Shown here: positions 7,170 through 47,561 of the stretch, one piece after another
Numbering within the stretch: position 1 is the stretch's first letter
How the letters are laid out: every line of letters starts with the position of its first letter
Virus record (IMG/VR): IMGVR_UViG_3300032236_001850
Span: 1-64,000 of that record
DNA length: 64,000 nt
Strand: one strand, 5' to 3'
The notes under the pieces: generated by a model
Seen by the model: only the letters and a program-made list of their open reading frames with translations
Told to the model about the DNA's origin: nothing
The model's database searches: none
Position numbers and translations under genes: made by a program

Positions 7170-8624
7170 TTAATATCCGTTAGCCATATTATTATTCATG
7201 CATTCGTTGATTTTATTAGCAACATGTTCTTGTTTAGATTCCTTTATGTATTTTGTTATCTTAGCAAGTTCTGGATTTGTATAATCACCAGCGTCTAGAT
7301 ATTTGTCTACAAGTTCATGAAGATCTGCTTGTGACATATTTTCATAATCATCCTCTGTTGCAGGTGCAGGTGCTACTGGTTCCTCATCGTCAGGTGTAGG
7401 ATAATCCTCATCGTCATCATCTCCATAATCAGAATCACCTTTAAGACCAGCTTTTTCCATTTCGTAATCGTTAAGCATTTCTGCTATACCGTCTATTATT
7501 TCTTGAACCTGTTCTCTTGCTTCAGCAGTTCCTGATAAGATACCACTGAACAATTCTAAGAATTCTCTAGCTGGCATACGCATCATTTCACCAAAGACAT
7601 ATTCCTGTAGATTTTTGATCTTATCAGCTTCCTTGAAACTATTGATATAATCTCTTAAATCTGCTGCTATTTCTGGACCAAATCTAAGATCTTCCAATTC
7701 ATCAGCTAACGAGTCAGTGTTTGCTATAATGGTTTCAGCTTTTTCTGTATCATCGGTAGGTAGTGCAGCAGCAGAGATCAACTCATAGATACCCTTTACT
7801 GTCTCGTGTAACAGCATAACAAATTCCGTTCCGATAGCATTAATTGTTGGTCCGATCGAATCCATCAGATCTTCAAGATCCTCAGCATCTGGCTCGTCTG
7901 TATTCATAAGCTCATCTAGAATTTTTTGAGCTAATTTTTCGGCATCCTCTGGGTCTTCTGGTGTGTTCCATTCAACTTTAACCGATCCTGAAAATCCAGA
8001 TTTGTCTCTTGTCCACATTTCTTTTTGAACTGCTAATGGTATAGCCCAATCGAAGAATGATGCTATTTCTGATATCTTATTAAGTAATAGGATATACTCC
8101 TCACCAAGTTCGTTACCTAATATTGTTTTAAGTCCATCCGAACAATCCTCAAGATTAAGTATTAATTTGGTATTCTTAGCCATACCTTGTGCTATGTTAT
8201 TAGCAATTTTTCTTCTGTGAACTTCGGATATGATATCCTCATCCTCTAGAGCTTTAAGCATTTGATCCTCTGGTGGTTCACCTGGTACGTCCTTCATCAT
8301 CTTCTGAATCTCGTCGTCCCTTTGTAATTTTATCTTAAGGTTTACGCCGTCAAGAATATCTCCATAGTGTTCCATTATCACATCAACAGCAAGTCTTTCT
8401 AGTGCATCCTCATGTCCTCTTTGGATTTGTCTTGCTCTACTAACGTGTTGCATGAACATTGGAATTTCTCTACCGAATCTTCTTTGAAAATCTGCATTTA
8501 TTTGTTGTGCTCTTGCTTCAACATCATGCAAATAATTACCTGGTGTATCTCCCTCCCCAGGAATTCCTGGATTTCCTTGCAATGATGCTTCGTCTATTGC
8601 ATATTCATCAAACTTCTTAATCAT
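7170..8624 (-). CDS. Hypothetical acidic protein with capsid-targeting-like leader
   Basis: MIKKFDEYAIDE/A N-terminus. Confidence 0.8.
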   Translation of the reverse strand: MIKKFDEYAIDEASLQGNPGIPGEGDTPGNYLHDVEARAQQINADFQRRFGREIPMFMQHVSRARQIQRGHEDALERLAVDVIMEHYGDILDGVNLKIKLQRDDEIQKMMKDVPGEPPEDQMLKALEDEDIISEVHRRKIANNIAQGMAKNTKLILNLEDCSDGLKTILGNELGEEYILLLNKISEIASFFDWAIPLAVQKEMWTRDKSGFSGSVKVEWNTPEDPEDAEKLAQKILDELMNTDEPDAEDLEDLMDSIGPTINAIGTEFVMLLHETVKGIYELISAAALPTDDTEKAETIIANTDSLADELEDLRFGPEIAADLRDYINSFKEADKIKNLQEYVFGEMMRMPAREFLELFSGILSGTAEAREQVQEIIDGIAEMLNDYEMEKAGLKGDSDYGDDDDEDYPTPDDEEPVAPAPATEDDYENMSQADLHELVDKYLDAGDYTNPELAKITKYIKESKQEHVANKINECMNNNMANGY

Positions 8625-9003
8625 TGTGTTTAGCTTTTAATTTTGGTAAATCAAACTCCAATGGAATTTTATTTTTTCTTAATTCTGTCATAAATCTAGC
8701 AACAACATCTTTAGCTGATGCTTTTGGGTGTGGTTCGACAGCTGGCTTATCTCTTCTAATTGGACTAGGTCTTTGAGGGGTTTTACCTGGAGCTGTACCT
8801 GGTTTGATTGTTGGTGCAGGCTTAGAAGGAGCTTCTTGAGCTGCTTTTGGATGTGGCTCGACAGCTGGCTTATCTCTTCTTATCGGACTAGGTCTTTGAG
8901 GGGTTTTACCTGGAGCTGTACCTGGCTTAGTTCCAGGTGCAGGTTTACTTGGTGCCTTCTGAGGACCATTCGATAAAAACTCGTCGATTTTTGTATAAAT
9001 CAT
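8617..9003 (-). CDS. Pro/Lys-rich protein with 41-aa internal duplication
   Basis: Start reassigned to MIYTKIDEFL (9003), downstream of the GATATATA motif. Confidence 0.75.
   Translation of the reverse strand: MIYTKIDEFLSNGPQKAPSKPAPGTKPGTAPGKTPQRPSPIRRDKPAVEPHPKAAQEAPSKPAPTIKPGTAPGKTPQRPSPIRRDKPAVEPHPKASAKDVVARFMTELRKNKIPLEFDLPKLKAKHND
8719..8964. repeat. Two-copy 123-nt coding direct repeat
   Basis: APSKPAPxxKPGTAPGKTPQRPSPIRRDKPAVEPHPKA twice. Confidence 0.9.
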
Positions 9004-9024
9004 AACTATTATTATTTTTATATG

Positions 9025-9040
9025 TGGATATATATATCCA
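9025..9040. promoter_or_regulatory. Palindrome TGGATATATATATCCA giving GATATATA on both strands (putative divergent late promoter)
   Basis: Perfect 16-bp palindrome between divergent genes starting at 9003 (-) and 9061 (+). Confidence 0.75.
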
Positions 9041-9060
9041 AATCTAATATTATATTTATT

Positions 9061-10725
9061 ATGAAGAATCAAAGTTTTCGTACCTTTTTCGATATTGAGC
9101 CGCTAATGGAGAACGTTCAGGATGCAAAATCCTATCTTGTTAAGCTTTATGCGGAAAAAAATAAAATCAAACCTTCGGAAATAGACGAAGAAACAAAGAA
9201 ACACATTTGGGACAATCCAAAATTCCTTGAAGTAAAGGATCTTATGGATAGAAATAAAATGCCAGGTAACACTCTACCGTTTCTTAAATTTGCAGTTGAT
9301 CAAAGAGCAACCATGGAACAATTGGAAGAAATTGTTGAATTATTGAAAGATAATAAAAACAATCTTAATTCCTTGCCTATGTCTATTCTTGAGTATTCTA
9401 AAATTGATAGAAACAAGAAGAAAAAAGAGGGAGAAGATGAAGAGGATGATAATGATCACAGACCAGGATGGGAAATGCTTCGAGATGATCTTTCAAATAT
9501 TGAGAGAAAAAGAAAATTGAAAAATTTCATCGACAGATTAACTCCTAGAATGAAAGAATATGTTAATAAAAAAGCAACAACAAAGCAACTAGAAAAATTA
9601 GAAGAGATATCAAGCCAATTAAAACTTATGCCTAAAAATAAGGAGGGCAGAGAAGCTTGGGATGCTTTTTTCTATCCAGATCTTGGTGTTCTAAATGATC
9701 ACGGTAAGGTAAAAGGTAGAATGGGATCTTATGATGACACCATAACATATACTGATTATAAAGATCCAGCAAAAGCAATGGATGGCATAATATCTGACGC
9801 CGAGGCTTTTATTTCTAAATGGGGAGAAGACGAGGATGCTGTTATCGCTAAAATAAAATCACTTGGTCCACAAGCTGGTATCATTTTCGCAAGAGATGGT
9901 TTTCTAATTATGTCTGCAAGAACACCGGAAGCACAAAGATTAGTTTGTTCAGAAACCGGCTGGTGTATTAGAACAGATTCTACATTTTGGAGCTATAGTT
10001 CAGGTAGAGTCCAAGTAAATGTAATTAATAATAATATACCAACCTCTGAAAGAAATAGTTTGGTTGGTATAACTATTAATAAAAACGGTACAGTTCACAC
10101 CGATGCAGATAGACCTAACGGTAGAATTCAGGCACAAGGTGGAGGAAATTACACTGGAAAACCTGCTACTGAATTACTTAGAAGAATTGGCGTACCTCAA
10201 GCTGGTATAGAAGCATTTGAAAGACAATTTCCAAAGGAAGCAAATGTTAAAATAATTCTAGAGCATTTCTTTAAAAATGCTGGAGGATTAAAACCTGATT
10301 TTATTGTTGAATCTCTTGTTAGCTTTAATAAAGGATTTCTTAAAGGAACTTTACCTGAAGATGAATGGGAAGAAATATCAGCTCTAATCTCTGAAATTAT
10401 ATCGGATGTTGAGGGTCTGAAACCTAAGGATTTCCTATCAGCATTCCTTGGTGACGGAGCAGATAAAACTGGTGGAATTTATGTCGAAGCAGCTTGGAAT
10501 ATATTTGATAAGCTTATTGGTGTTAAGAATGTAACTGAGGCTCAAATCGAGAGAATGTACGAAGATACAAAAGAAGGATACGAGGCTTTAGAACTGCTGA
10601 TTGGAATGTACGATGAAGGTTCCTTACCTGGGGTACCAAGAGAAGATTACGAAGCAATGAAATCTGCATACTCATACAAGGATAAATCTCTTGCTAGATT
10701 TAAGAAATTAATGAAAGAAAAATAA
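9061..10725 (+). CDS. Hypothetical protein, paralog of 31257..32756, capsid-targeting-like leader
   Basis: Start at MKNQSFRTFFDIEPLME/N; shared blocks AGII, AQ..C...WCI, GIY..A.W..FD..IG. Confidence 0.85.
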   Translation: MKNQSFRTFFDIEPLMENVQDAKSYLVKLYAEKNKIKPSEIDEETKKHIWDNPKFLEVKDLMDRNKMPGNTLPFLKFAVDQRATMEQLEEIVELLKDNKNNLNSLPMSILEYSKIDRNKKKKEGEDEEDDNDHRPGWEMLRDDLSNIERKRKLKNFIDRLTPRMKEYVNKKATTKQLEKLEEISSQLKLMPKNKEGREAWDAFFYPDLGVLNDHGKVKGRMGSYDDTITYTDYKDPAKAMDGIISDAEAFISKWGEDEDAVIAKIKSLGPQAGIIFARDGFLIMSARTPEAQRLVCSETGWCIRTDSTFWSYSSGRVQVNVINNNIPTSERNSLVGITINKNGTVHTDADRPNGRIQAQGGGNYTGKPATELLRRIGVPQAGIEAFERQFPKEANVKIILEHFFKNAGGLKPDFIVESLVSFNKGFLKGTLPEDEWEEISALISEIISDVEGLKPKDFLSAFLGDGADKTGGIYVEAAWNIFDKLIGVKNVTEAQIERMYEDTKEGYEALELLIGMYDEGSLPGVPREDYEAMKSAYSYKDKSLARFKKLMKEK

Positions 10726-10745: not shown

Positions 10746-12014
10746 ATGGAAAAAAGCATAAAAATAGCAAGATTTGAAGATTATCTTTTAGAAGCTAGAA
10801 AAAGATGGGATTCGTTGAATAACAGAACTAATGAGCTCTATAGATCTTTCGAGGAAACCAACGAAGGTAAAGATTTATCAGCCATTGGGGTTTATATCGA
10901 GGAGAGAACACCACAGGTTCTTATTTGTAAAAGAAGAGGTGGTCCTATGGCAACTGTTGAGCTTTTCAAAGATGAAGATGGAAAATATTGTTACGAATAC
11001 ACATCAACTAAGGAAGGTGTTGAGAGATACAATCTTTCCAAATTTGATTCCCCACATGCTTGTCTGAGAGGTTTCTTTCTAAGAATCATAAGAAACAACA
11101 TTCCAGCTGCAATCATACCTAAAAAAGATATACCAAATCTAAATTTCAATGAGCTTGTTCCTGTTGGAGCAGGTTTACCATTTACTGAAATTCTTGCGAG
11201 AATGAAAAGAGTGATTGGTGGTGAGGAATTAACAAACCTTGATGCTAATGCAGTTCAAAAACTTCCAATTATAAAAAACCTTGAGGATATGGGTATGGTT
11301 GGTAGAAGAGTTGATAATAAAGAAACCATAATCAAGAAGGTGGATATCATATCACCCAAATATAAATTCTACTCAAGAGCAGCATTCAGAGTTGGTGAGA
11401 TATATGGTAAAACCATTGCTGGTATCTTAAAATTGCAGTATGATGATCTAAGAAGATCAAGTAAAGGTAAAGGTCTTTTATTTGACGATGGTCAGGAAAT
11501 CTGGAGAGTTAATAACTCAAACCGTATTCCTTTAAATAGTATAAATTATAGAACTGGTGATAATTCACTTAAATGCAATATTCAAGACGAGGAAGTATTT
11601 GGATCTGTTTTTGTTTCCATATTCGTTAGAACTTTCAAGAGAGCTAAGGGAAGATACGAGAATGAAAAATTAATTAATCCAGAGGCTCACATGATAAAAA
11701 GTGAGGGTGAGGAAACACAAAGAATTGCTACCGAACTTAATGGTCTTCTCTCTGATTACTTTACTGAAGCAGCAGCAAGATTAGAGCCAACCATATTCAT
11801 CAGTCCAGAATTCGATAAAAATCAAGCAATTGTTAATAATGCTAATGCACTTTTGATTAAGTATCTTATGAAAAATGGAACTTTTGAATTAAAGAATAGA
11901 ATAATAAAAAACAGAGAACTTGATGATCTTGTTAATATTACAACTAGACACGAGGATATTGATGACTTAACAAGAAAATTAATTAGAGCTGCTAGAGTTC
12001 TTAGATTTACATAA
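10746..12014 (+). CDS. Hypothetical protein with capsid-targeting-like leader
   Basis: MEKSIKIARFEDYLLE/A. Confidence 0.8.
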   Translation: MEKSIKIARFEDYLLEARKRWDSLNNRTNELYRSFEETNEGKDLSAIGVYIEERTPQVLICKRRGGPMATVELFKDEDGKYCYEYTSTKEGVERYNLSKFDSPHACLRGFFLRIIRNNIPAAIIPKKDIPNLNFNELVPVGAGLPFTEILARMKRVIGGEELTNLDANAVQKLPIIKNLEDMGMVGRRVDNKETIIKKVDIISPKYKFYSRAAFRVGEIYGKTIAGILKLQYDDLRRSSKGKGLLFDDGQEIWRVNNSNRIPLNSINYRTGDNSLKCNIQDEEVFGSVFVSIFVRTFKRAKGRYENEKLINPEAHMIKSEGEETQRIATELNGLLSDYFTEAAARLEPTIFISPEFDKNQAIVNNANALLIKYLMKNGTFELKNRIIKNRELDDLVNITTRHEDIDDLTRKLIRAARVLRFT

Positions 12015-12259
12015 TGGAAGCAATAGACGAGAGAAAGAAACAGGAAGTTTGCGAAGGATGTGGTAAACAAATAGCAGACCCTGAAAAAGAATGTCCAACA
12101 TGCGGAACTTTTCCACATAAAGCCTATCACGAGAGAGCAGCAGCTAAAACACTGGGAATTTCAAAATGGGTCAAGAATTCTCCAGTCATGCAACCCAATC
12201 AGAAACTAACTGAAAACACACACAAACTGATAAATATAATATCCTTTGATGATTTTTAA
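12014..12259 (+). CDS. Zn-ribbon protein with C-terminal targeting-like motif
   Basis: CEGC..CPTC; ends KLTE/NTHKLINIISFDDF. Confidence 0.7.
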   Translation: MEAIDERKKQEVCEGCGKQIADPEKECPTCGTFPHKAYHERAAAKTLGISKWVKNSPVMQPNQKLTENTHKLINIISFDDF

Positions 12260-15738: not shown

Positions 15739-17180
15739 TGACCACAAAGAAAAAGAAAAAACCAATAGTTGATATAGACGTTCTAAACTCGGATCAGAGG
15801 GAAGCTTTTGAAGAGTTGAGAGATTTTATATGCGACAGGGATGACGAAAATGTTTATGTTCTTAAGGGTTGGGCAGGTACAGGTAAAACCTTTTGTATAA
15901 GCGTTCTCGTTAGATACATTTTGGAAGTGGTGCATCCTAAAAGCGCTTGGTATAAAATAGCTGTAACTGGACCTACTAATAAATCGGTTAGAGTTATAAA
16001 GAAGACAAGCAATCTAAGAAATCCTAGAGTTACTTTCCAAACAATACACAAGCTTCTTGGTTTAACCGAGAAGATAACCAATGATGGGCAGCAAGTTTTT
16101 GTCAACCAGGAGAAGAACTTCAAACCACAGATCAACTCTGTGAAGCTTCTAATCATAGACGAGGTTTCCATGCTTAATGATGATCTTTTTCATGAGATCC
16201 TTAAATATCGGGACAAGCTAAAGATTATCTGCATGGGTGATCCAGCACAGATACCACCAGTGGGTAAACCTGACTGTATCCCGTTCAGAGACGAGTTAGC
16301 TGATCCTTATGGTATTAAAACTCTTCAACTCAAAAAGATAATGAGACAGAAAGAGGGTAATGCCATCATAGATTCCTCTGTGCTTATTCGTGAAGATCTT
16401 TGGTCTGAAAGAAATCCAGTTAAGCCTGTTACCTCTCTAAATTCACTTGGCGAGGGTGTGGAATTTTTAAATCTTAATGATGGGGAGACAAGGAAGGGCT
16501 TCGGTGATATTCTTGCCAAATATTTCAGATCAGAAGAATTTAAGGATGATTCTGAGTACTGCAAGATTATAGCATGGAGAAATAAAACGGTTTCCAGCAT
16601 GAATAATCTTGTTAGAAGAATCATATTCGGAGAGGATGAATGTAGATCTAAGATACTCGTTGGTGAAAAGTTAATTGCAAATTCTCCGGTTATAATTCAG
16701 GGGAATCTGATACTATTTAATACCAATGATGAATTTTCTGTTGAGTCTACCAAGATAAGGGAGATGAACATGGTTCTAAAAACATTCTCCCCCGTTATAG
16801 AAGTGAAACTAAAGTTCTATGATGCCGTGGTTAGCTATCTTAATGACGAGGATGAGATTGAGAAGACCTCAATAGAAATACTACATGAGGATAGTGAAGC
16901 CGAATTTTCCAAAATTGCAAACCTACTTAAACTGAAGGCAATAGAAAAGAAGGGCAGGGATAGAAGCTGGATAGATTACTACGATTTTATGAGAAACTTT
17001 GCTGATGTTAGCTTTGCATATGCAATAACAGCACACAAAAGCCAAGGGAGCACTTATAACACAACATTTGTACTGGAAGATGATATAGATGTAAACATCA
17101 ACGTTGTTGAAAGAAACAGAATCAAATATACTGCCTACACAAGATCAAGTAAAAAGGTTTACATATTGAAAAGATTTTAA
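15738..17180 (+). CDS. dda: SF1B DNA helicase (Dda/RecD-like)
   Basis: GWAGTGKT, IIDEVSM, MGDPAQIPPV, YAITAHKSQGST; start at MTTKK. Confidence 0.85.
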   Translation: MTTKKKKKPIVDIDVLNSDQREAFEELRDFICDRDDENVYVLKGWAGTGKTFCISVLVRYILEVVHPKSAWYKIAVTGPTNKSVRVIKKTSNLRNPRVTFQTIHKLLGLTEKITNDGQQVFVNQEKNFKPQINSVKLLIIDEVSMLNDDLFHEILKYRDKLKIICMGDPAQIPPVGKPDCIPFRDELADPYGIKTLQLKKIMRQKEGNAIIDSSVLIREDLWSERNPVKPVTSLNSLGEGVEFLNLNDGETRKGFGDILAKYFRSEEFKDDSEYCKIIAWRNKTVSSMNNLVRRIIFGEDECRSKILVGEKLIANSPVIIQGNLILFNTNDEFSVESTKIREMNMVLKTFSPVIEVKLKFYDAVVSYLNDEDEIEKTSIEILHEDSEAEFSKIANLLKLKAIEKKGRDRSWIDYYDFMRNFADVSFAYAITAHKSQGSTYNTTFVLEDDIDVNINVVERNRIKYTAYTRSSKKVYILKRF

Positions 17181-18379
17181 ATAAGCCCTTGATTTAGTTT
17201 CCTTCCAATATTAACAGTTTGTCTAGTTACACCAATTTTTTTCATTATTCTATCTTGCATTTCTTGGAATCCATCGATCTTGTATAATTCTAGCGGATTC
17301 TTTTTGTAGAAATCACAAATTTTATCAAAATATTTTCTATGAAAATCATCAAGGCTTACATTATCTATATAATCTCGTATTAGGTCACTATAAATATTTG
17401 GTAAAATTGATGATAAATCAGTCATACCAAATATGGTATTAACATGTTCTAAAAATCTTAAAGAAAGAACATTGCCCCAACTACCATACCTGTCACACGT
17501 TATTTTGGTTATAGATAGGAGATTGTCAATAATGCATTTTTTTATAATGTCAACAACCTCCTCTGAAGTTGATTTGTTGGATATCTGTAAAAGAATGGTC
17601 CCGTTACTTCTCCTTGTAATGCTTGTTTTTTTTCCATAAACGTATTCGACGGTAATCCAGCTATGTAAGGCGCTATGAAAGTTATTCATAAACACATTTA
17701 AAATAAAATGATCATCCTCCTCTTCCTCGTTTATGGCAAATAAATTTTTTAATATAGCATCCCTAAGACCGCTATGCAGCGTGGGTGAGATAGTATATCT
17801 TTTATTCCCCAAAGTAAGTAGTTGATTATTTATTAATATTTGACTTTTTTTACCATGTTCATTAAAAGTGGCGTGGTACCCAAGATCTACCGAGAATTTG
17901 TTACATATATCTGCTATTTCCCTTAAATCTGCAGGTTCTGTAATTCCAGAATTTTGTTTTATGATTGATTCTATTTCACTTTTGGATTTACCAAGGATCC
18001 TTTTAATTCCTATTTCTTCTATTTTTTTAATAAGATTTTCCTTTTTTATCCCATTGATTGCTACCATTTTTGATATAAGATATAGGTATAAGCTATTTAA
18101 ACATTCGTTTAGAGATGGAAATGCTCTGTCAACAAAAGTATTTCCCTGGGATACGCATTTATATGCATACCCACCATCACCGGTTGGATAAAGCATTGTC
18201 TTGGAGCCGACACCATTCATATGAATAAAACCGCTGGATTTTACATCGAATGTTATGAATCCTGGTTGTTTAAGTGCCATTATTCCATTCATCGTTTCAT
18301 TTCTTCCCAATTCTCTGGTTAGCTCGGCAGCTTGTTCTTTCTTGCTTGCCTCGAATAATCTGAAGTTTAATATTTTCAT
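17177..18379 (-). CDS. Hypothetical protein with capsid-targeting-like leader
   Basis: MKILNFRLFE/A; GATATATAG just upstream. Confidence 0.8.
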   Translation of the reverse strand: MKILNFRLFEASKKEQAAELTRELGRNETMNGIMALKQPGFITFDVKSSGFIHMNGVGSKTMLYPTGDGGYAYKCVSQGNTFVDRAFPSLNECLNSLYLYLISKMVAINGIKKENLIKKIEEIGIKRILGKSKSEIESIIKQNSGITEPADLREIADICNKFSVDLGYHATFNEHGKKSQILINNQLLTLGNKRYTISPTLHSGLRDAILKNLFAINEEEEDDHFILNVFMNNFHSALHSWITVEYVYGKKTSITRRSNGTILLQISNKSTSEEVVDIIKKCIIDNLLSITKITCDRYGSWGNVLSLRFLEHVNTIFGMTDLSSILPNIYSDLIRDYIDNVSLDDFHRKYFDKICDFYKKNPLELYKIDGFQEMQDRIMKKIGVTRQTVNIGRKLNQGLI

Positions 18380-18383
18380 CCTC

Positions 18384-18391
18384 TATATATC
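18384..18391 (-). promoter_or_regulatory. GATATATA putative late promoter
   Basis: 4 nt upstream of the ATG at 18379. Confidence 0.65.
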
Positions 18392-19642: not shown

Positions 19643-19676
19643 ATAAAAAACCCAATCTGATGATTGGGTTTTTTAT
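19643..19676. terminator. Bidirectional intrinsic terminator
   Basis: ATAAAAAACCCAATC-TGAT-GATTGGGTTTTTTAT between convergent genes. Confidence 0.9.
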
Positions 19677-20644: not shown

Positions 20645-20647
20645 GTT

Positions 20648-21664
20648 TTAAATTTCTATATCGCCGTTATTGTACACTTTTTTTATTGTACCACTTCCAC
20701 CTGATTTTAATACTACCTTATCGCCAACCTTAGGTAATAGTTTTCCGTTACTTTCCCCTGGTTTACCTTCTCCAGGTTTTCCTTCACCTTCTCCAGGTTC
20801 TCCGTTACCTTCCCCTTCTCCAGGTTCTCCGTTACCTTCTCCAGGTTCTCCATCACCTTCTCCAGGTTCTCCATCACCTTCTCCAGGTTCTCCATCACCT
20901 TCTTCATCTCCATCTCCATCTCCATCACCTTCTTCTGATTCTCCATCACCTTCCCCAGGTTCTCCTTCTCCAGATTCGTTATCTCCTTCCGCATCTTCCT
21001 GTTCATCTGAATCGTTTTTTCCCTCTTGTACTTGAAGATCTTCATTTGCTTCCGGTGTTTTCTCCTCTGGATCGTTAACTTCGCCCATCGCTGCCTGCAT
21101 CATAAGCTGATCTATTCTATTCATTGCTCCATCCTCTAAGAGTAGCTGGTAAATATCTTCAGCTCTCATACCAGCATATTTTCTTTCGTATAATCCAGCT
21201 TCCTTACCGCCCATTATTGGTTTTTTCCATTTACCGTTTATGAAATTGTCGTCGTGAATTAATAGCGGGTTTATTGCATAATCACAAGCAACGTTCCATA
21301 ATCTTGGATCTCTATTCTCTCTTCTTATATTATGCTGAAACATACAATGAAGAACCTCATGTGCAAGAACAAATCTTAGTGCTTCATCCGATTGATCCTG
21401 CACAAATTTTGGATGGAATATAATGGAAATTCCATTTGTGCACATTGTTGGTGGATCTATTTTATCTGAACCATAGATATCCAAATGCGCCAGCAATCTT
21501 CCGTAAAGATTTGCATTAAGATTAAGCCATAAAATGGCTCGCTTCATCTTTTTGTTTATCTCCTCAGAATCATAGGATTCCGACTCGTTTATGGCTTTAA
21601 TGTAAACATTAAAGCTAGTTATAGCCTTTCCTATGCCGGATCTAGTTTCTAATAATCTTTCCAT
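20648..21664 (-). CDS. Putative HExxH metallopeptidase (DUF2201_N type) with acidic repeat linker
   Basis: TMCTNG, FVLAHEVLHCMFQH, WNVACDYAIN; C-terminal KVGDKVVLKSGG small beta-barrel. Confidence 0.8.
   Translation of the reverse strand: MERLLETRSGIGKAITSFNVYIKAINESESYDSEEINKKMKRAILWLNLNANLYGRLLAHLDIYGSDKIDPPTMCTNGISIIFHPKFVQDQSDEALRFVLAHEVLHCMFQHNIRRENRDPRLWNVACDYAINPLLIHDDNFINGKWKKPIMGGKEAGLYERKYAGMRAEDIYQLLLEDGAMNRIDQLMMQAAMGEVNDPEEKTPEANEDLQVQEGKNDSDEQEDAEGDNESGEGEPGEGDGESEEGDGDGDGDEEGDGEPGEGDGEPGEGDGEPGEGNGEPGEGEGNGEPGEGEGKPGEGKPGESNGKLLPKVGDKVVLKSGGSGTIKKVYNNGDIEI
20755..20965. repeat. Coding tandem repeat, about 21-nt unit (G[DN]GEPGE)
   Basis: Directly visible; TTCTCCAGGTTCTCCATCACC units. 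Confidence 0.9.
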
Positions 21665-21669: not shown

Positions 21670-23166
21670 TTATATGTGTCCACTTGATTTTAATTTCCCC
21701 GTTAATAGAACAACAGCATCTCTTTTTGGACCTTCTTTATCTGTTGGAAGCGGTGTAAATTCTGGGAATTTACCAAGTATTAATGTTTTGTACATCCAGG
21801 ATAAAACTTCATTTTCATCATATCTAGAAATGTATTTTAATGCATTGTAAATTTTAGTAGGATCATACTCCTCTATTCTACCAAGTAGTAATGTTGCTAT
21901 ACCGTAAAGAACTGCGATGTCTGTCTTTGCTTTCATTACCAATGGAACATCGTCTGGATCTTCTAATATTCTATCAAGATCACTTTCCGGTATTTCTTTA
22001 AGAACTTTAAGGTAGTCTACGAAATCTGTTGCTCCTTCTATACCAACGGATGGTGAGAATATGTCAAATATTTGATCCATTGGAAGTTGTCTCCAGTTTT
22101 TCAAACCTTTAATTTTTAATTTACCAGCTAATTTAAGTGCTCCATCGGTCCAAGATCTAGGTGATGGATAAACTTTACCTTGATCTGGATCATTCTTATG
22201 AAATAAATGTTTCTTTCTCATAATGAATGCAGGTAATTCTGGTAATATTTTACTGTGTCCTACTGCAAATTCTTCCCATTCTTCTGGTTTAGGCACAAAG
22301 TTATAAACATCAAATCTATTTGCAAGAGCTGTCGACATTGGGTGGATATCAGCATCCGGGTCATCCTCTTGTCTGTTACCAGCTCCAACTATAATCCATT
22401 TATCAGGTAATTGGTAATCACCAATTCTGCCAGCTTGTACGAATTTAAGAAGCACATTATAGATTGGACCTTGAGCTCTGTTCATCTCATCAAGGAATAC
22501 TATACCACCTTTTCCATTCTCACCGTTATCTCTTGGTAATATAGATGGCGGGTTATCTCTGGTAAATCCTGAACCTGGATCGATAATAGCACCATTTTTA
22601 ACAACAGATGGTGTTATCTCGTGCTGTGATGGTATACCTCTAAAATCCTCAGGCAACATTGTTTCCAAATCTAGGAATAGGAAATTACATCCTATTTTGG
22701 AAGCTGCTTCAACCACAATTTCAGTTTTACCAATACCTGGTGCACCGTACATAAAAATAGGTTTTGCTCTTTCTCCTGCAACTTTTAATTCATATAGATC
22801 AATGATTTGGTTTTGTAGAAATTTACCTGATTTATCTATCGGGTTACCAGATTTAACTCCCCCTGGCCAACCAGTTCCAACCACAGCCTCATCTAGAGAT
22901 TCAGTAATACCAACTTCTCCAAAGAAATTTCTAAATTGGTCCAGAATAGGTCCATTCTCAGGCACAAATAACATGGCTCCAGGAAGTCCTTTTTTAGGAC
23001 CTCTTTTAATTTTTCTAATTTTATCATTTGCAAGAAGCTCAAAGAAATCCTTTGTCCATCCTGTGAATTTATCTATAACATTTGCTTTTAACCAGCTAAA
23101 AAGTCCTTCGTTGACCATGTATGATTCATTAACATAATCCTGAAAATTAAAAATTCTTTTTTTCAT
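21670..23166 (-). CDS. MoxR-family AAA+ ATPase with capsid-targeting-like leader
   Basis: GAPGIGKT, FLDEMNRA, ALANRF; N-term MKKRIFNFQDYVNE/S..VNE/G. Confidence 0.88.
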   Translation of the reverse strand: MKKRIFNFQDYVNESYMVNEGLFSWLKANVIDKFTGWTKDFFELLANDKIRKIKRGPKKGLPGAMLFVPENGPILDQFRNFFGEVGITESLDEAVVGTGWPGGVKSGNPIDKSGKFLQNQIIDLYELKVAGERAKPIFMYGAPGIGKTEIVVEAASKIGCNFLFLDLETMLPEDFRGIPSQHEITPSVVKNGAIIDPGSGFTRDNPPSILPRDNGENGKGGIVFLDEMNRAQGPIYNVLLKFVQAGRIGDYQLPDKWIIVGAGNRQEDDPDADIHPMSTALANRFDVYNFVPKPEEWEEFAVGHSKILPELPAFIMRKKHLFHKNDPDQGKVYPSPRSWTDGALKLAGKLKIKGLKNWRQLPMDQIFDIFSPSVGIEGATDFVDYLKVLKEIPESDLDRILEDPDDVPLVMKAKTDIAVLYGIATLLLGRIEEYDPTKIYNALKYISRYDENEVLSWMYKTLILGKFPEFTPLPTDKEGPKRDAVVLLTGKLKSSGHI

Positions 23167-23190: not shown

Positions 23191-23198
23191 TATATATC
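23191..23198 (-). promoter_or_regulatory. GATATATA putative late promoter (MoxR operon)
   Basis: Recurrent motif. Confidence 0.65.
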
Positions 23199-29879: not shown

Positions 29880-29887
29880 GATATATA
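29880..29887 (+). promoter_or_regulatory. GATATATA putative late promoter
   Basis: 4 nt before the ATG at 29892. Confidence 0.65.
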
Positions 29888-33338: not shown

Positions 33339-34205
33339 TTATGCTTTGATTATTTTATGATATTGGCCGTAGTTATTTATTGCCCATCTAACAACTATAT
33401 TTAGATCAGGATTGCCGAATAATATTTTTCCATTTTTCCCGCATATTATATATCTAAATGGATCATTTTTAAATTCTATGAGTATTATATCTTTAGCATC
33501 CCTCCCATTAAAAATCACTTGGTGCTCCTTATCCTTTTCGTGCCAAACTCTAATTCCAGAAGCTCTAAACAGTACTGCATAATTTCCATATCTATGTTGG
33601 TATCCGTATGCTGTAGGATATAAATAATGCTTGGGAAAGTCATCAATAGTAAATCCAAAATTATAGCCTCCCTCCACTTTATCAGAAGCTGGCAAGCCTC
33701 TTGTACATGCCAAGTCATCTATATTTTTAGCTCCGAGTTTGAATCCGGATTTGCTAATTTCTTTAGCGGCATTACTAAAATGTATGAGCCATTGATTTTT
33801 AAGTATTTCTGGTGATTTAAACCACCTCCAGGAGGGATATTTGTTTGGCCTTATGGGTAGAGTTTCTTTCTCTATTTTATCATATAGGTATTCTGCAAAT
33901 TTATCGTAGGTTTTCTTATCGTTTTTTTCTAACCAAGATATTATTTTATTTTCTCCGGCCTCCCTTGGACCTTCAAATTTATACCCAGTATCTAAAACAA
34001 AATCGTTAAAAAGGTGTGAATATTTATACGGGAGTGGATTCTTCTTCGAAGCCTTTGAAGATTTAAGATATTCGTTAAATTTTATTAATTCATTTGTTAA
34101 AAATTCATTTATTATTCGAGATCCAGTAAAACTCTTAAGAGTATCTGAACCCGTAAATTCTTTAAACAATTTAAGTGATTTCATGGTTGTTATATTTTTA
34201 TCCAA
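33339..34205 (-). CDS. Hypothetical protein with repeated targeting-like motifs
   Basis: MKSLKLFKEF..IINEF..LIKFNEYL; alternative start 34184. Confidence 0.75.
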   Translation of the reverse strand: MDKNITTMKSLKLFKEFTGSDTLKSFTGSRIINEFLTNELIKFNEYLKSSKASKKNPLPYKYSHLFNDFVLDTGYKFEGPREAGENKIISWLEKNDKKTYDKFAEYLYDKIEKETLPIRPNKYPSWRWFKSPEILKNQWLIHFSNAAKEISKSGFKLGAKNIDDLACTRGLPASDKVEGGYNFGFTIDDFPKHYLYPTAYGYQHRYGNYAVLFRASGIRVWHEKDKEHQVIFNGRDAKDIILIEFKNDPFRYIICGKNGKILFGNPDLNIVVRWAINNYGQYHKIIKA

Positions 34206-34918
34206 TCTCTGAATCTTATGATTGATTCATTTAGTGTTTCTTTAAAGTTGAATACCTTCATAAATTTAGCAAAATCAGCTTTGTAACCTCTCTGTGTTTC
34301 GTCATATTCATCTTTGGTGTATTGCCAATTGAATGAAAGTTGCTCTGGTGTTTTAAATCCGAAAAATTTAAGTACTTCTCTCTCGGTCTTAACAGCAACT
34401 TCTCCATTCCAATTATGGCCTATTGCAACCACACCACATTCTTTATCTTTTAGCAGATTGGATTCCCCAAGAGTTGTGTGTCTGTTTTCCAACCAGGTCA
34501 ATCTCTCAATTAATTGTGCGTAGATTGCATTCATCTTACCCCATCTGATAGAACCAAAGAATATAATTATATCAGCGTCATAGATGGCATTTGCAACTTT
34601 ATACATTTCGTCTGTTTTGTTGTTTATTGCTGCCCAGCATCTTATGAATTTCTCCGGATTATTGCTTTTTAACATTGCATCCTTAACTCCGCAATGATTA
34701 CCGTCCCTTGTTGAAACATTACCTTCACAAGGAAATATTTTAAGTTTACTAACATCTATAATTTCAGCATTCTTAAGCTTCTTTTTTAGCTCCGCTGCAA
34801 TCATCGATGACTTTGGCAATTCCTTCTCACCACTCCATCTATTGGATGTTGTCAGAAAAAGTATTTTCTTTTTCTTATCTTTCTTTATGTAGTTATAAAG
34901 TCTTTTCAATTTATCCAT
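34190..34918 (-). CDS. Flavodoxin-fold protein (NADPH-dependent FMN reductase / iron-sulfur flavoprotein-like)
   Basis: ILFLTTSNR..SS, IFPCEG..C..C Cys motif, DADIIIFFGSIRWG; ends TLNE/SIIRFRDWIKI. Confidence 0.8.
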   Translation of the reverse strand: MDKLKRLYNYIKKDKKKKILFLTTSNRWSGEKELPKSSMIAAELKKKLKNAEIIDVSKLKIFPCEGNVSTRDGNHCGVKDAMLKSNNPEKFIRCWAAINNKTDEMYKVANAIYDADIIIFFGSIRWGKMNAIYAQLIERLTWLENRHTTLGESNLLKDKECGVVAIGHNWNGEVAVKTEREVLKFFGFKTPEQLSFNWQYTKDEYDETQRGYKADFAKFMKVFNFKETLNESIIRFRDWIKI

Positions 34919-34922: not shown

Positions 34923-34930
34923 TATATATC
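34923..34930 (-). promoter_or_regulatory. GATATATA putative late promoter
   Basis: 4 nt upstream of the ATG at 34918. Confidence 0.65.
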
Positions 34931-44541: not shown

Positions 44542-44614
44542 ATCTATTGTATAATATAGCATACGGGGAAATCCGAAAACCGTCAATAGAGTAGGTAAAT
44601 CAAAATTTGAAAAA

Positions 44615-45145: not shown

Positions 45146-45163
45146 TAAAAAAATATTGCTGAT

Positions 45164-45194
45164 AAAAAGGACCAGTACACTGGTCCTTTTTTTT
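45164..45194 (+). terminator. Intrinsic terminator
   Basis: AAAAAGGACCAG-TACA-CTGGTCCTTTTTTTT. Confidence 0.9.
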
Positions 45195-45199
45195 GTTTG

Positions 45200-45207
45200 A
45201 ATATATA
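45200..45207 (+). promoter_or_regulatory. AATATATA(G) variant of putative late promoter
   Basis: One mismatch to GATATATA; precedes an operon of targeting-motif genes. Confidence 0.5.
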
Positions 45208-45227
45208 GAGTAAAGTATTACTTAGAA

Positions 45228-45950
45228 ATGAAATATATCAGGATATTTGAAAATTACAGCAAAGAAAATCCAACTGAGGAGGAAGTTTATTCCGATGCAG
45301 ATGAGTATTTTCTTTCACTGAATCCAGATTTGCTTCAAACCACAGGGTTTAACACATATGCACACCACATCAAATCGAGAAAGAATGTTGATTTTGAAGC
45401 ATCCTATGCTATAAATATAAAACATTTTGGTGATAAAACATCCGATGACATATTCAGAGGACTACAGGAATTTTTTGCAAAAAAAGGGTATAATTTCAAA
45501 ATGTATTCTCCTCTCTTAAACGGAGATGAAAAAAGAGTAGCTGATCTTGTAGCCAGAATTAATATGGCAAGACCCTCAAATCGAGGCGGAGAATTGGGAA
45601 GAGCTTTATGGATAAAATGCAGAAGCGGTAAATCAATCTGTTTTTATTTCTCTCCAATAGATGATCCAAATTGGTGGCCAATTTGTTTATCCATACATAG
45701 ATTTGATGATAAAAGAATGAATTCCATTTATTGGACAAGTCTTCGTGAATATGAAAGTTTCAATATGGTTTTCTGGAATAAAACAGAAGTGATTGATGGA
45801 AATTTTTCAATTGTGTATGACTATGATGAAGAAAACGAATGTACTGCCGTGTGTGATTCAGCTTCAGATTCAATTGGATACTCAGCAACAGTAAAAATAC
45901 CGGAGGGTGAGGCTGATCCGGAGGATGTTAAATACATCCATAGAAAATAG
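45228..45950 (+). CDS. Hypothetical protein with capsid-targeting-like leader
   Basis: MKYIRIFENYSKE/N. Confidence 0.8.
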   Translation: MKYIRIFENYSKENPTEEEVYSDADEYFLSLNPDLLQTTGFNTYAHHIKSRKNVDFEASYAINIKHFGDKTSDDIFRGLQEFFAKKGYNFKMYSPLLNGDEKRVADLVARINMARPSNRGGELGRALWIKCRSGKSICFYFSPIDDPNWWPICLSIHRFDDKRMNSIYWTSLREYESFNMVFWNKTEVIDGNFSIVYDYDEENECTAVCDSASDSIGYSATVKIPEGEADPEDVKYIHRK

Positions 45951-45956
45951 GAATAA

Positions 45957-46367
45957 ATGAACAAGAAACAAGAAGTTAGCGACCTGGAGGTTGCGAGAAA
46001 GATGATAAAAATACATCAAAGTGCTGCAGATAGAAAGCTAGATTTTGATTTAAGTTTAGAAACAGTTAGAAAACTATTATCATACAAAACATGTTATTAT
46101 ACAGGAAGAGAATTTGATGAGGAAGGAGCTTTCGCAAGAAGCTTTGACCGTGTGAATTCATCCAAAGGATACGTGGAAGGAAATGTGGTTTCGTGCACTG
46201 TTGATATAAACGGCAAAAAGAGCAATCTGACATTTGATGAAATATCCGCTCTATACCACAAATTAAAGCCATTAAATGAAGAACAACCTCCCGTTGAGGT
46301 TGAGGTTAAGGTAAAGAAAACAAAGCCTGCTAGAAAGAAAAAAACGAGTGTTGAAGATGTCAACTAA
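45957..46367 (+). CDS. HNH-like (beta-beta-alpha) domain protein, possibly degenerate
   Basis: CYYTG..SFDRVNSSKGYVEGNVVSC...N..K. Confidence 0.55.
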   Translation: MNKKQEVSDLEVARKMIKIHQSAADRKLDFDLSLETVRKLLSYKTCYYTGREFDEEGAFARSFDRVNSSKGYVEGNVVSCTVDINGKKSNLTFDEISALYHKLKPLNEEQPPVEVEVKVKKTKPARKKKTSVEDVN

Positions 46368-47184
46368 AAAATTTAAAGATTGGGATATAGGTGAGTCAAT
46401 CTCCCACGAGTTGGCCGATGAGGTTGCTAAGGATCTGTATGAAATACCTCTCATAAAAAAGTGGGAGGAACACAGGGCAAAAACTTTACATTTTAATGCT
46501 GGAAGATACACCATAAACATATTGAAAGGATTTAAGGTTCATGGGTACACCAATGGATTAAAAATGGCTTTCAATCTGCCAAGGGTTTTTATAAACAAGG
46601 TAAAGGAATTGGAGAAGTATTCACACTGTCACATAGCACCAGATGTTGTTTCGGATAAACTCTATATCACATTGATCGACGACACAAAATTAAGTAGCTA
46701 CGTGAGTGATTCCGATGTGGTGAGAACTTTTAAGGAGACCGGAGACATGGAGCTTGAGGTTAGATTCAACACCAACTCTAAAAGTGAAGTAAGAAAAATA
46801 TTTGAGAAATCCATAGATTTTATAATGGATGATCTTAGGGATTCGCATTACATCTTTAATGCTGACATCAGAAAAATACCAAAACTTAACGCCATCATGA
46901 AGGAACAGGTTAATGAAACCTACCGAAATATGATTGATGATCTAAGCAAGGGAGATTTGGATGCGATTCAAAATAATTACAAATTTGATTCAAATACGAT
47001 TATAGCAATGTTGGGTAGAGCTATCGATGAGGATCCTTCATTGGAAGACCAAATAAATTCCCTACCAGATGAGGCCAAGGATATATGGTTTGAAGCATTA
47101 GGAGGAAGAGGATTCAAGGTCACCAAAAATCTATCAAAATTGTTAAAATCTATCAAAATTGTTAATGCAATGAAAATGATATGA
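46357..47184 (+). CDS. Hypothetical protein with capsid-targeting-like leader
   Basis: MSTKKFKDWDIGE/S. Confidence 0.75.
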   Translation: MSTKKFKDWDIGESISHELADEVAKDLYEIPLIKKWEEHRAKTLHFNAGRYTINILKGFKVHGYTNGLKMAFNLPRVFINKVKELEKYSHCHIAPDVVSDKLYITLIDDTKLSSYVSDSDVVRTFKETGDMELEVRFNTNSKSEVRKIFEKSIDFIMDDLRDSHYIFNADIRKIPKLNAIMKEQVNETYRNMIDDLSKGDLDAIQNNYKFDSNTIIAMLGRAIDEDPSLEDQINSLPDEAKDIWFEALGGRGFKVTKNLSKLLKSIKIVNAMKMI

Positions 47185-47561
47185 TGAAAAATGTAAAAAT
47201 ATACGAGGAGTGGGATGGGGAATCCGAAGAGAATCTTGATATACTAAGGAATTATCTCGAAAATAACAAATTTAGATCCGCTTTCGATAAGGCTTTCCTA
47301 GATAGAGGTATGGAAGCTGACGTTGTTAGAGAGCCTCTTTCAGACACTGAGATCATTGTGGAATGGTGGCCATTAGGTGAAACAGTTCCCAATAAGATAA
47401 GTTATTACATTGATGATATTGCAAAAATACTTTCCGGACTTTTTGGTGTCAAGGAGGTCACATGGAGGTTCGAACCAGGTAAGGGTGTATCGAGGATAAT
47501 ATTCGATTTGAATGAACCAATAAATAGAAACATGGTCAGATTTAAAAACATGTTAATGTAG
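47181..47561 (+). CDS. Hypothetical protein with capsid-targeting-like leader
   Basis: MKNVKIYEEWDGE/S. Confidence 0.75.
   Translation: MMKNVKIYEEWDGESEENLDILRNYLENNKFRSAFDKAFLDRGMEADVVREPLSDTEIIVEWWPLGETVPNKISYYIDDIAKILSGLFGVKEVTWRFEPGKGVSRIIFDLNEPINRNMVRFKNMLM

What the first reader, a model, noticed from the sequence alone, without database searches (positions are those of the whole stretch)
7170..47561. A T4-like capsid-targeting peptide plus protease site on about 15 unrelated proteins: a predicted packaged and injected protein cargo
Seen: N-termini share K..[FY][EDK][EDx][FYW] followed by a mostly hydrophobic-x-E site. Examples: MIKKFDEYAIDE/A (8624-), MKNQSFRTFFDIEPLME/N (9061), KIARFEDYLLE/A (10746), MKILNFRLFE/A (18379-), ITSFNVYIKAINE/S (21664-), RIFNFQDYVNE/S (23166-), KHIKEYEEY..LNE/G (29892), YIFESFVDWSLNE/N (32756-), KLFKEF (34184-), RIFENYSKE/N (45228), KKFKDWDIGE/S (46357), KIYEEWDGE/S (47181). 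Mirror-image C-terminal versions: LTE/NTHKLINIISFDDF* (12014 ORF) and LNE/SIIRFRDWIKI* (34918- ORF). All lie in GATATATA operons; I did not notice the motif in the 32-bp-promoter gene trains. Known: T4 internal proteins carry an N-terminal capsid targeting sequence (IPIII MKTYQEFIAE) removed by prohead protease gp21 at (I/L)xE. Inference: this phage loads a large enzyme arsenal (AAA ATPase, peptidase, SLT, flavoprotein) into its head for delivery at infection, with the tag working at either terminus.
Basis: partly seen in the sequence, partly recalled or inferred. Interest (0 to 1): 0.85.

Follow-up and report, generated by a model that had tools for sequence, protein, structure and literature searches.

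The report
T4-like head-targeting tag in huge phage
About a dozen unrelated late proteins of this 434-kb uncultured phage start with a short peptide almost identical in design to the one phage T4 uses to load proteins into its head and then cut off, so the phage probably packs a varied protein cargo that can be predicted from sequence alone.

Summary
Twelve window proteins start with [KR]-x-[IL]-x-x-[FY]-x-x-[FYW], followed within 0-17 residues by (mostly aliphatic)-x-Glu and a small or polar residue. Only two are paralogs. Others carry AAA_5, DUF2201_N or SLT domains. The motif is far above chance, is N-terminal, and sits in operons behind GATATATA(G), not in the early gene trains.

It is conserved in orthologs down to 30% identity. 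It recurs on many unrelated proteins in related huge phages: 13% of ORFs in 642-kb LR756502.1, at a fixed register. In design it matches T4 IPII/IPIII (MKTYQEFIAE|A) and IPI; relatives carry near-copies (MKRVKSYNEFIAE|S).

Those relatives have a T4-type head module: Portal_T4, a Peptidase_S77 protease fused to a scaffold with the catalytic His and Ser kept, and Gp23. Tagged genes cluster just downstream of their capsid gene and share its late promoter.

Best reading: a T4-type capsid-targeting propeptide removed by a gp21-family protease.

Not shown: packaging, cleavage or injection. The protease, portal and full capsid gene were not found in the 137 kb of this contig I could read. The C-terminal version is only partly supported.

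This is a new variant of a known kind, and unusually wide in scope.

The parts
7170..8624 (-). Tagged late gene, 484 aa, no Pfam. N-terminus MIKKFDEYAIDE|ASLQGNPGIPG. Tag DNA is 8589-8624.
   Evidence: Homologs keep the tag: LR756502.1 MKNFSKFLEE|ITIKGNTGIPG, and L049 MKSFKQFLNE|ADIKGNPAI.
9061..10725 (+). Tagged late gene, 554 aa. N-terminus MKNQSFRTFFDIEPLME|NVQDAK. Paralog of 31257-32756.
10746..12014 (+). Tagged late gene, 422 aa, no Pfam. N-terminus MEKSIKIARFEDYLLE|A.
12014..12259 (+). 81-aa zinc-ribbon-like protein with a candidate C-terminal tag, ...QKLTE|NTHKLINIISFDDF*. Weak case.
   Evidence: PSSM score is only 7.0.
17177..18379 (-). Tagged late gene, 400 aa, no Pfam. N-terminus MKILNFRLFE|A.
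20648..21664 (-). DUF2201_N metallopeptidase-like protein, 338 aa. The tag sits at residues 15-27: ...AITSFNVYIKAINE|S.
   Evidence: The LR756500.1 ortholog starts MKYIKSYENFIFE|N. Homologs in T4-like marine phages have no tag.
21670..23166 (-). MoxR-type AAA_5 ATPase, 498 aa, with a ~130-aa N-terminal extension that starts MKKRIFNFQDYVNE|S.
   Evidence: The LR756500.1 ortholog starts MSFKNFTQYSE. 364-aa homologs in T4-like marine phages lack both the extension and the tag.
29892..30623 (+). SLT lytic transglycosylase, 243 aa. N-terminus MLKHIKEYEEYDPSLEKLNE|G.
   Evidence: 55 homologs keep MKHIKEYEEF, a linker variable in length and sequence, and an invariant Glu20. AlphaFold2 gives pLDDT below 50 for residues 1-22 and a mean of 86 overall.
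31257..32756 (-). Tagged late gene, 499 aa, no Pfam. N-terminus MRKSYIFESFVDWSLNE|NISAAK.
   Evidence: In 104 homologs P3 is I/L/V/M in 104 of 104, P1' is N/S/D/T, and an aromatic pair precedes the site in 97 of 104.
33339..34184 (-). Tagged late gene, start at the ATG at 34184. N-terminus MKSLKLFKEFTGSDTLKSFTGSRIINE|F. Compare T4 IPI, MKTFKEFTSTTTPVSTITE|A.
   Evidence: PSSM score 12.8.
34190..34918 (-). Flavodoxin-like FMN_red protein, 242 aa, with a candidate C-terminal tag ...ETLNE|SIIRFRDWIKI*.
   Evidence: The tail [LI][NHKQ]E[SAG][LIV]x[RK]F[KR]x[WFY] is kept in 120 homologs, but the whole protein is 74-90% identical among them, so this is weak evidence.
45228..45950 (+). Tagged late gene, 240 aa. 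N-terminus MKYIRIFENYSKE|N.
46357..47184 (+). Tagged late gene, 275 aa. N-terminus MSTKKFKDWDIGE|S.
47181..47561 (+). Tagged late gene, 126 aa. N-terminus MMKNVKIYEEWDGE|S.
9027..9038 (.). Divergent late-promoter-like palindrome GGATATATATATCC. It serves 9061+ and 9003-/8624-.
18384..18391 (-). GATATATA, 4 nt before the ATG of 17177-18379.
23191..23198 (-). GATATATA, 24 nt before the ATG of the AAA / DUF2201 operon.
29880..29887 (+). GATATATA, 4 nt before the ATG of the SLT gene.
34923..34930 (-). GATATATA, 4 nt before the ATG of the operon 34918->30613.
45199..45207 (+). GAATATATA, preceded by a hairpin plus T-run, 20 nt before the ATG of the operon 45228-47561.

Best explanation
The shared N-terminus is a T4-type capsid-targeting propeptide.

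Proposed mechanism (inferred):
1. A short, probably amphipathic peptide ([KR]-x-[IL]-x-x-[FY]-x-x-[FYW]) docks the newly made late protein onto the scaffolding core while the prohead assembles.
2. Once the shell closes, a gp21-family (Peptidase_S77) serine protease cuts after the Glu of the following aliphatic-x-Glu site.
3. This releases the tag and leaves the mature protein inside the head next to the DNA.
4. By analogy with T4 IPI and Alt, at least part of this cargo would leave with the DNA at infection.

Shown here: the motif, its position, its conservation, its link to late and head-gene promoters, and the presence of the T4-type head machinery in related phages.

Inferred only: docking, cleavage, residence in the head, and injection.
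For: 1. Same design as the experimentally defined T4 tag. The T4 record gives IPII and IPIII as MKTYQEFIAE|A and IPI as MKTFKEFTSTTTPVSTITE|A. PMC9958956 and PMC5694885 state that this 10-20-residue CTS targets even foreign proteins into the core and is removed by gp21, which cuts after Glu.

2. Near-copies occur in the clade, for example MKRVKSYNEFIAE|S and MKSFKQFLNE|A. A T4-derived regex hits 20 N-termini against 2 internal sites in about 1 million positions.

3. The register is fixed at the extreme N-terminus. In LR756502.1 the aromatic pair starts at residue 7 in 97 of 1018 ORFs, against a 1.2% background.

4. It is conserved where the protein body has diverged.
- The 499-aa family keeps it down to 30% identity, with P3 aliphatic in 104 of 104.
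- The SLT family has an invariant Glu20 and a variable linker.
- The AAA/VWA pair is tagged in LR756500.1 at 29% identity, but untagged in T4-like marine phages.

5. It is not part of the fold. AlphaFold2 leaves SLT residues 1-22 unmodelled while the rest is confident.

6. It is co-regulated with head genes. In the window the tagged genes sit behind GATATATA. In L163 the same motif precedes the protease gene. In LR756502.1, AATATAT lies upstream of 70 of 134 tagged genes against 162 of 883 others (p = 7e-16), and the related ATATATA core precedes the terminase, portal, protease and capsid genes.

7. It is embedded in the head module. The gene just after the capsid gene is tagged in 41 of 110 loci, against 2-8% at other positions. 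In L163 a tagged 182-aa gene sits between the protease-scaffold and capsid genes.

8. The protease is present in the clade. The L163 608-aa protein scores Peptidase_S77 at 6e-15 and its best PDB hit is T4 gp21, 5jbl, at 5e-6. The equivalents of His85 and Ser140 are kept. Portal_T4 and Gp23 are also present.

9. The capsid proteins of the clade carry [IL]-x-E-N at the end of their N-terminal region, the same kind of site as the tags.

10. This contig itself encodes a Gp23-family protein at positions 87,289-88,182, and 26 of its 227 ORFs within 1-136,779 are tagged.
Against: - There is no proteomic or experimental evidence for any member of this clade.
- The S77 protease, the portal and a full-length capsid gene were not found in the 31% of this contig I could read. 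Three searches with capsid proteins of relatives did not return this contig.
- Cultured phages with the same head module (Tenacibaculum PTm1 and pT24) show few or no tags in the regions inspected. That head type therefore does not require the tag.
- The load would be very large: 13% of ORFs in LR756502.1. Many of those belong to one expanded paralog family, which inflates the count.
- Several predicted P1' residues (N, G, E, Q, F) differ from Ala, the P1' residue at the four T4 sites marked here (IPI, IPII, IPIII, gp23). Two window tags have S or D at P3 instead of an aliphatic residue.
- MoxR ATPase, VWA-peptidase and flavodoxin have no known role in a virion.
Confidence: 0.72

Rival explanations
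1. The peptide is a linear recognition motif for some other late-phase partner, not for the prohead core. Candidates are a phage AAA+ or Clp machine (as a degron or unfoldase tag), a chaperone, or a cell-pole or membrane assembly site.
For: The phage encodes a ClpP in the window, and LR756502.1 has three. Iyer et al. (PMC7824862) speculate that AAA+ translocases move proteins in jumbo-phage assembly. The number of tagged proteins (about 12-13% of ORFs) is high for head cargo. Enzymes such as the RNA ligase and CCA-adding-type nucleotidyltransferase are tagged in LR756502.1.
Against: The motif matches the T4 CTS residue for residue. It is followed by a conserved aliphatic-x-Glu site of the gp21 type. 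Tagged genes are concentrated inside the head operon next to the capsid gene. The ClpP gene lies in an early train, while the tags are on late genes.
Confidence: 0.13
2. The peptide is a cleavable pro-segment whose main role is to keep enzymes inactive until maturation, like a zymogen. Head entry would then be determined by other parts of the protein.
For: The tags sit on enzymes (SLT, metallopeptidase-like, ATPase). In phiKZ-like phages, long propeptides are removed from head proteins (PMC5694885).
Against: A 10-20-residue peptide that is unstructured in the model and does not contact the SLT domain is unlikely to inhibit it. The same peptide sits on many small proteins with no enzyme domain. 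In T4 the equivalent peptide is sufficient for targeting.
Confidence: 0.1
3. The motif is a by-product of AT-rich codon use after the start codon, of chance, or of common descent of the proteins.
For: K, I, F, N and Y are encoded by AT-rich codons, and the genome is 35% G+C. Two of the candidates are paralogs. In LR756502.1 many tagged ORFs look like one expanded family.
Against: Early genes of the same genome lack the motif (5 of 76 against 11 of 33). Shuffles never reach the observed count. Apart from that one pair, no similarity was detected between candidates, and several carry different Pfam domains. The fixed register, the conserved Glu and the aliphatic P3 are not explained by base composition. 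T4-like marine phage loci show no enrichment (1.9% against 1.5% in the control).
Confidence: 0.03

Closest known systems
T4 capsid-targeting sequence (CTS) of internal proteins IPI, IPII and IPIII, removed by prohead protease gp21 (Mullaney & Black 1996, as cited in PMC9958956 and PMC5694885)
   Same: - A peptide of about 10-20 residues at the extreme N-terminus, of the form M-K-x-[YF]-x-[EQ]-F, ending in aliphatic-x-Glu.
- Found on otherwise unrelated proteins encoded by late genes.
- The surrounding clade has gp20, gp21 and gp23-type head genes.
   Different: - The host is probably a member of the Bacteroidota, judged from the early promoter type.
- The genome is 434 kb.
- In the window the aromatic pair starts at residues 5-10 in ten of the twelve tags (later in two: about residue 18 in DUF2201_N and 9 in 33339-34184); in relatives it is mostly at residue 7. 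In T4 it starts at residue 4.
- P1' is mostly N, S or G, not A.
- There are dozens of carriers instead of three, and they include enzymes (AAA_5, SLT, DUF2201 and perhaps flavodoxin).
- There may be C-terminal versions.
- In relatives the protease is fused to the scaffold.
- Nothing has been tested experimentally.
Propeptides of phiKZ, 201phi2-1 and SPN3US head and ejection proteins, cut by gp175/gp245 (PMC5694885)
   Same: A giant-phage head that packs many proteins. A T4-related protease cuts after Glu. The propeptides are thought to direct incorporation into the head.
   Different: Those propeptides are mostly longer than 100 residues. Their site is A/S/G-x-E, not aliphatic-x-E. No short shared aromatic tag has been described for them.
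Encapsulin cargo-loading peptides
   Same: A short terminal peptide addresses varied enzymes to the interior of an HK97-fold shell. It can sit at either terminus.
   Different: Encapsulin peptides are not cleaved and have a different consensus; this rests on my own knowledge. Here there is a Glu cut site and a tailed-phage head module.
Ejected internal enzymes of other phages, such as T7 gp16 with its lytic transglycosylase domain and the N4 virion RNA polymerase
   Same: The general idea of enzymes carried in the head and delivered into the cell. The SLT domain among the tagged proteins fits this.
   Different: Those proteins are incorporated through specific core or portal contacts, not through a shared portable tag; this rests on my own knowledge.

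Membership tests
T4-type capsid-targeting propeptide (CTS) | A short peptide (about 10-20 aa) at the extreme N-terminus with the M-K-x-[YF]-x-[EQ]-F type consensus, shared by otherwise unrelated proteins | tested here: met
   Window N-termini compared with T4 IPI, IPII and IPIII taken from NC_000866. Only one paralog pair among the carriers. Enrichment and N-terminal specificity are shown.
T4-type capsid-targeting propeptide (CTS) | The tag ends in a gp21-type site: aliphatic-x-Glu, with the cut after the Glu | tested here: met
   The first Glu after the aromatic pair has I, L or V at P3 in 8 of 12 window tags (direct reading). P3 is aliphatic in 104 of 104 members of the 499-aa family. Glu20 is invariant in the SLT family. 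Cleavage itself has not been shown.
T4-type capsid-targeting propeptide (CTS) | A gp21-family (Peptidase_S77) prohead protease encoded by the same genome | tested here: inconclusive
   Not found in contig positions 1-136,779; the remaining 298 kb could not be read. Present with catalytic His and Ser in relatives L163, LR756502.1 and LR756500.1.
T4-type capsid-targeting propeptide (CTS) | T4-type head genes (gp20 portal, gp23 capsid, scaffolding core) in the same genome | tested here: inconclusive
   Only a 297-aa Gp23-family protein was found in this contig, at 87,289-88,182 (Pfam 4.7e-11). Full modules are seen in relatives that share tagged protein families with the window.
T4-type capsid-targeting propeptide (CTS) | The tagged proteins are physically inside proheads and heads, and the tag is removed | not testable with these tools
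   The clade has no cultured member with a virion proteome. PTm1 and pT24, cultured relatives by capsid gene, show few tags in the regions inspected.
phiKZ/SPN3US-type head propeptides | Long propeptides (often over 100 aa) cut at small-residue-x-Glu (A/S/G-x-E) | tested here: not met
   Predicted propeptides here are 10-27 aa, and P3 is aliphatic. The definition comes from PMC5694885.
Sec, Tat or lipoprotein signal peptides | A hydrophobic core of about 7-15 residues after a basic N-terminus | tested here: not met
   The tags are charged and aromatic and have no hydrophobic run. True signal-peptide-like N-termini in the window (721-1437, 2359-4293, 44615-45145) look quite different.

The most novel reading that the evidence does not exclude
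Huge phages of this Bacteroidota-associated clade use a portable T4-like address tag, occasionally placed at the C-terminus, to load dozens to more than a hundred different proteins into the head. The cargo includes enzymes: a MoxR ATPase with its VWA-peptidase partner, a transglycosylase, a flavodoxin-like protein, and in relatives an RNA ligase and a CCA-adding-type nucleotidyltransferase. On this reading the head delivers a ready-made take-over and counter-defence arsenal with the DNA, and that arsenal can be read straight from the genome sequence.
Probability: 0.35. Interest if true: 0.85.

Novelty: new variant of a known kind. Interest (0 to 1): 0.7.

Why it matters
Most genes of huge phages have no known function. 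If the tag is a head address, then about one gene in eight in these genomes gets a location (inside the head) and a timing (present at the moment of infection) from sequence alone.

That would turn the question of what giant phages inject into a list that can be checked by virion or viral-fraction proteomics.

It would also show that the T4 targeting-and-trimming system is ancient and portable across very distant hosts. It would offer a ready-made tag for loading foreign proteins into the heads of Bacteroidota phages, as has been done with T4.

Tried and rejected
1. Looking for close relatives. Megablast of 17 kb of the window against GenBank phages found nothing. Only uncultured huge phages (the LR7565xx and LR745206 records) share the tagged proteins.

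2. Retrieving this contig's own head module. All of the following failed:
- The search for related loci with capsid proteins of LR756502.1, LR756500.1, L163 and LR756504.1. The first three returned 80 better-scoring loci and the fourth only 2 loci; none included this contig.
- A promoter-pattern scan, which returned only window copies.
- Walking with the look-up of encoding contigs, which reached position 136,779 and used every look-up without meeting a portal, an S77 protease or a full capsid gene.

3. The idea that the 46.5-kb contig from the same sample (L163) is the missing part of this genome. Rejected: tetranucleotide correlation is only 0.55, against 0.77 within the window, and its capsid gene lies on contigs of at most 94 kb.

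4. PHROGs and the ESM Atlas gave no function for the unknown tagged proteins.

5. Cultured relatives by capsid gene (PTm1, pT24) show few tags, so they are not obvious model systems.

6. Gene density under the standard code is normal. The only in-frame stop I noticed is the TAA that splits the DUF2201 gene.

7. Literature searches found no description of a CTS-like tag in huge phages or megaphages. This library does not cover all journals.

Full report
**Where the window comes from.** The window is the first 64 kb of a 434,509-bp viral contig, IMGVR_UViG_3300032236_001850, which is JGI Ga0335263_1453039. It has about 35% G+C. Twelve copies of a promoter of the Bacteroidota type (TTCGAA, a spacer, then TATATTTGCA) head long plus-strand trains of small genes. 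I call these the early trains. Between them lie shorter operons on either strand. Their first ATG is preceded at 4-27 nt by GATATATA(G), or by GAATATATAG at 45199.

All twelve N-terminal examples are present. Three of them start at an internal ATG rather than at the upstream alternative start codon of the longest ORF: 9061, 34184 and 46357.
- A loose regex finds the motif in 16 of 109 proteins, against 5.4 +/- 2.2 in shuffles. None of 2000 shuffles reached 16.
- It occurs in 11 of 33 proteins outside the early trains, against 5 of 76 inside them (p = 7e-4).
- A PSSM trained only on another phage gives 5 N-terminal hits in the window against 0.2 expected.
- With the first 30 residues removed, only 9061-10725 and 31257-32756 are related.
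- The other carriers include an AAA_5 MoxR-type ATPase, a DUF2201_N metallopeptidase-like protein, an SLT transglycosylase and several proteins with no known domain.

**The tag is conserved and widespread.**
- 104 homologs of the 499-aa protein, down to about 30% identity, keep M-[KR]-I-[IV]-E-S-F-x-x-W, a spacer, and [ILVM]-x-E-[NSDT]. P3 is aliphatic in 104 of 104, and the aromatic pair starts at residue 7 in 70 of them.
- 55 SLT homologs keep MKHIKEYEEF, then a linker that varies in length and sequence, then [LI]-N-E with an invariant Glu.
- AlphaFold2 models the SLT protein well (mean pLDDT 86) but leaves residues 1-22 below 50. That stretch is exactly the predicted propeptide. So the best-conserved stretch of the sequence is not part of the fold, which is what one expects of a linear motif that binds a partner.
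- The MoxR ATPase and its VWA partner are tagged in LR756500.1 at 29% identity: MSFKNFTQYSE and MKYIKSYENFIFE. Their homologs in T4-like marine phages lack both the tag and the N-terminal extension.
- In relatives the tag sits on many neighbouring, unrelated proteins (L049, L051, LR756502.1).
- Across the whole 642-kb LR756502.1 genome the aromatic pair starts at residue 7 in 97 of 1018 ORFs, against a 1.2% background. The consensus is MK[HY][LI]KxYK[IL]FE[SN]. By regex, 134 ORFs (13%) are tagged, against 1.3% for internal-Met controls. Part of that count is one expanded paralog family.
- T4-like marine phage loci show no enrichment.

**Comparison with T4.** In the T4 record itself, IPII and IPIII start MKTYQEFIAE|A and IPI starts MKTFKEFTSTTTPVSTITE|A.
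- The window's MKSLKLFKEFTGS... and ARFEDYLLE|A follow the same plan. So do FNFQDYVNE|S in the window and, in relatives, MKSFKQFLNE|A and MKRVKSYNEFIAE|S.
- A regex built from the T4 sequence hits 20 N-termini and only 2 internal sites in about a million positions.
- Reviews state that the T4 CTS is enough to take foreign proteins into the scaffolding core, and that gp21 removes it by cutting after Glu (PMC9958956, PMC5694885).

**The head machinery in the clade.**
- LR756502.1 and LR745206.1 share the 484-aa and 499-aa tagged families with the window.
- LR756502.1 has a T4-type terminase and a Portal_T4 portal (1e-57). It has a 699-aa protein whose N-terminus matches Peptidase_S77 weakly and aligns with T4 gp21 across His85 and Ser140. 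It also has a Gp23 capsid protein.
- LR756500.1 and the L163-type phage have the same gene order.
- The L163 protease-scaffold scores Peptidase_S77 at 6e-15, and its best PDB match is T4 gp21, 5jbl.
- The capsid proteins of the clade carry [IL]-x-E-N at the end of their N-terminal region.
- Tagged genes are part of this module. The gene after the capsid gene is tagged in 41 of 110 loci, against 2-8% at other positions. L163 has a tagged gene between the protease-scaffold and capsid genes.
- The late promoter is shared. GATATATAG precedes the L163 protease gene. In LR756502.1, AATATAT is enriched upstream of tagged genes (p = 7e-16), and the related ATATATA core precedes the terminase, portal, protease and capsid genes.

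**What is missing.** I could not read this contig's own head module.
- Three capsid-protein searches returned 80 closer loci each. A fourth found only two loci, neither of them this contig.
- Two DNA-pattern scans failed.
- Walking along the JGI contig ended at position 136,779.
- That stretch has 227 ORFs, 26 of them tagged. It holds a 297-aa Gp23-family protein at 87,289-88,182 and a block of very large, probably tail-fibre genes at 107-126 kb. It has no portal, no S77 protease and no full-length capsid gene.
- No virion proteome exists for any member of the clade. The cultured phages that share the capsid type (PTm1, pT24) show few tags in the regions inspected.

**The C-terminal version.** The flavodoxin-like protein ends ...ETLNE|SIIRFRDWIKI*. 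This tail is kept in 120 homologs, but those homologs are 74-90% identical overall, so its conservation says little. One other family, encoded a few kb after the capsid gene in relatives, ends ...NE|NLKRIRGFKDFEK* or ...SE|NLKYMKSFNSF.... There is no general C-terminal enrichment in LR756502.1. The tag keeps its orientation at the C-terminus, with the cut site moved to its N-terminal side. I rate this part as possible but not established.

**Verdict.** The motif is real, functional, and best explained as a T4-type capsid-targeting propeptide with a gp21-type cleavage site (confidence about 0.7). The main rival is a tag for some other late partner. Composition, chance and paralogy are excluded by the controls. 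I found no description of such a tag in huge phages in the searchable literature. What is new is the scale, the presence of enzymes among the carriers, the distant host group, and the possible use of the C-terminus. That packaged proteins are injected remains an analogy with T4.

Noticed in passing
window 19676-21664 (-): The DUF2201_N gene (20648-21664) and the DUF2201 VWA-like gene (19676-20644) are in the same reading frame, separated only by TAA-AAC-ATG. In other phages the two halves form one protein of about 390 aa. The upstream half ends with a long Gly-Glu-Pro-rich repeat (DNA repeats at 20736-21032). This could be a split gene or a read-through.
   Followed up: partly
window 13165, 18399, 23207, 34934, 36118, 40093, 47595, 54807, 56345, 57411, 58964, 62354 (+): Twelve copies of a roughly 50-nt promoter-like element (T-run, TTCGAA, spacer, TATATTTGCA) resemble the Bacteroidota -33/-7 promoter type. 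They head the early gene trains and point to a Bacteroidota host.
   Followed up: partly
window 18379, 29892, 34918; contig 89,812: GATATATAG sits only 4 nt before the ATG of several late genes. Either the transcripts are nearly leaderless, or the motif is not the -10 element itself.
   Followed up: no
window 34190-34918 (-): The flavodoxin-like protein is exceptionally conserved: more than 2,500 homologs, with the best 120 at 74-90% identity. It occurs on phage-like contigs of 400-633 kb but has no tblastn match in any GenBank phage record, including the LR7565xx huge phages.
   Followed up: partly
contig 87,289-88,182 (locus L424:15862-16755): A 297-aa Gp23-family protein matches only the C-terminal half of the clade's capsid proteins. 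It lies among metabolic and small genes, not in a head module.
   Followed up: partly
window 23710-24828 and 48093-48830; LR756502.1 491690-492961 and 597869-599053: The T4-type RNA ligase and the PolyA_pol-head nucleotidyltransferase are untagged early genes in the window. Their LR756502.1 homologs start with the tag (MKKLHRYNSFIKE..., MIITKYAKFLES...). The tag therefore appears to be gained and lost on enzymes.
   Followed up: partly
window 28348-29025 (+): A ClpP protease gene (CLP_protease, 1e-56) lies in an early train. LR756502.1 has three ClpP paralogs.
   Followed up: no
window 36548, 38545, 39186, 59551, 59903, 60262 (+): A multi-copy family of small early proteins shares an N-terminal ...[LF]G[FY][ND]EPC motif. 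It is also present in LR756502.1.
   Followed up: no
window 56662-56718 (+) and the gap 56,700-57,400: Rfam reports a tRNA-like element (34.2 bits) that ARAGORN does not call. The surrounding 0.8 kb has no convincing ORF.
   Followed up: no
window 8719-8963: Two tandem copies of a 122-nt unit (85% identical) lie inside the small late ORF 8617-9003.
   Followed up: no
window 1-437 (+): The contig starts inside an ORF made of acidic E-P-L-E-P-E-E-P-L-E repeats with an 18-nt periodicity. This repeat may be where the assembly broke.
   Followed up: no
contig 68,424-68,663: An 80-aa ORF matches part of the T4 gp17 large terminase (phmmer 1e-6). It stands alone in an early train.
   Followed up: no
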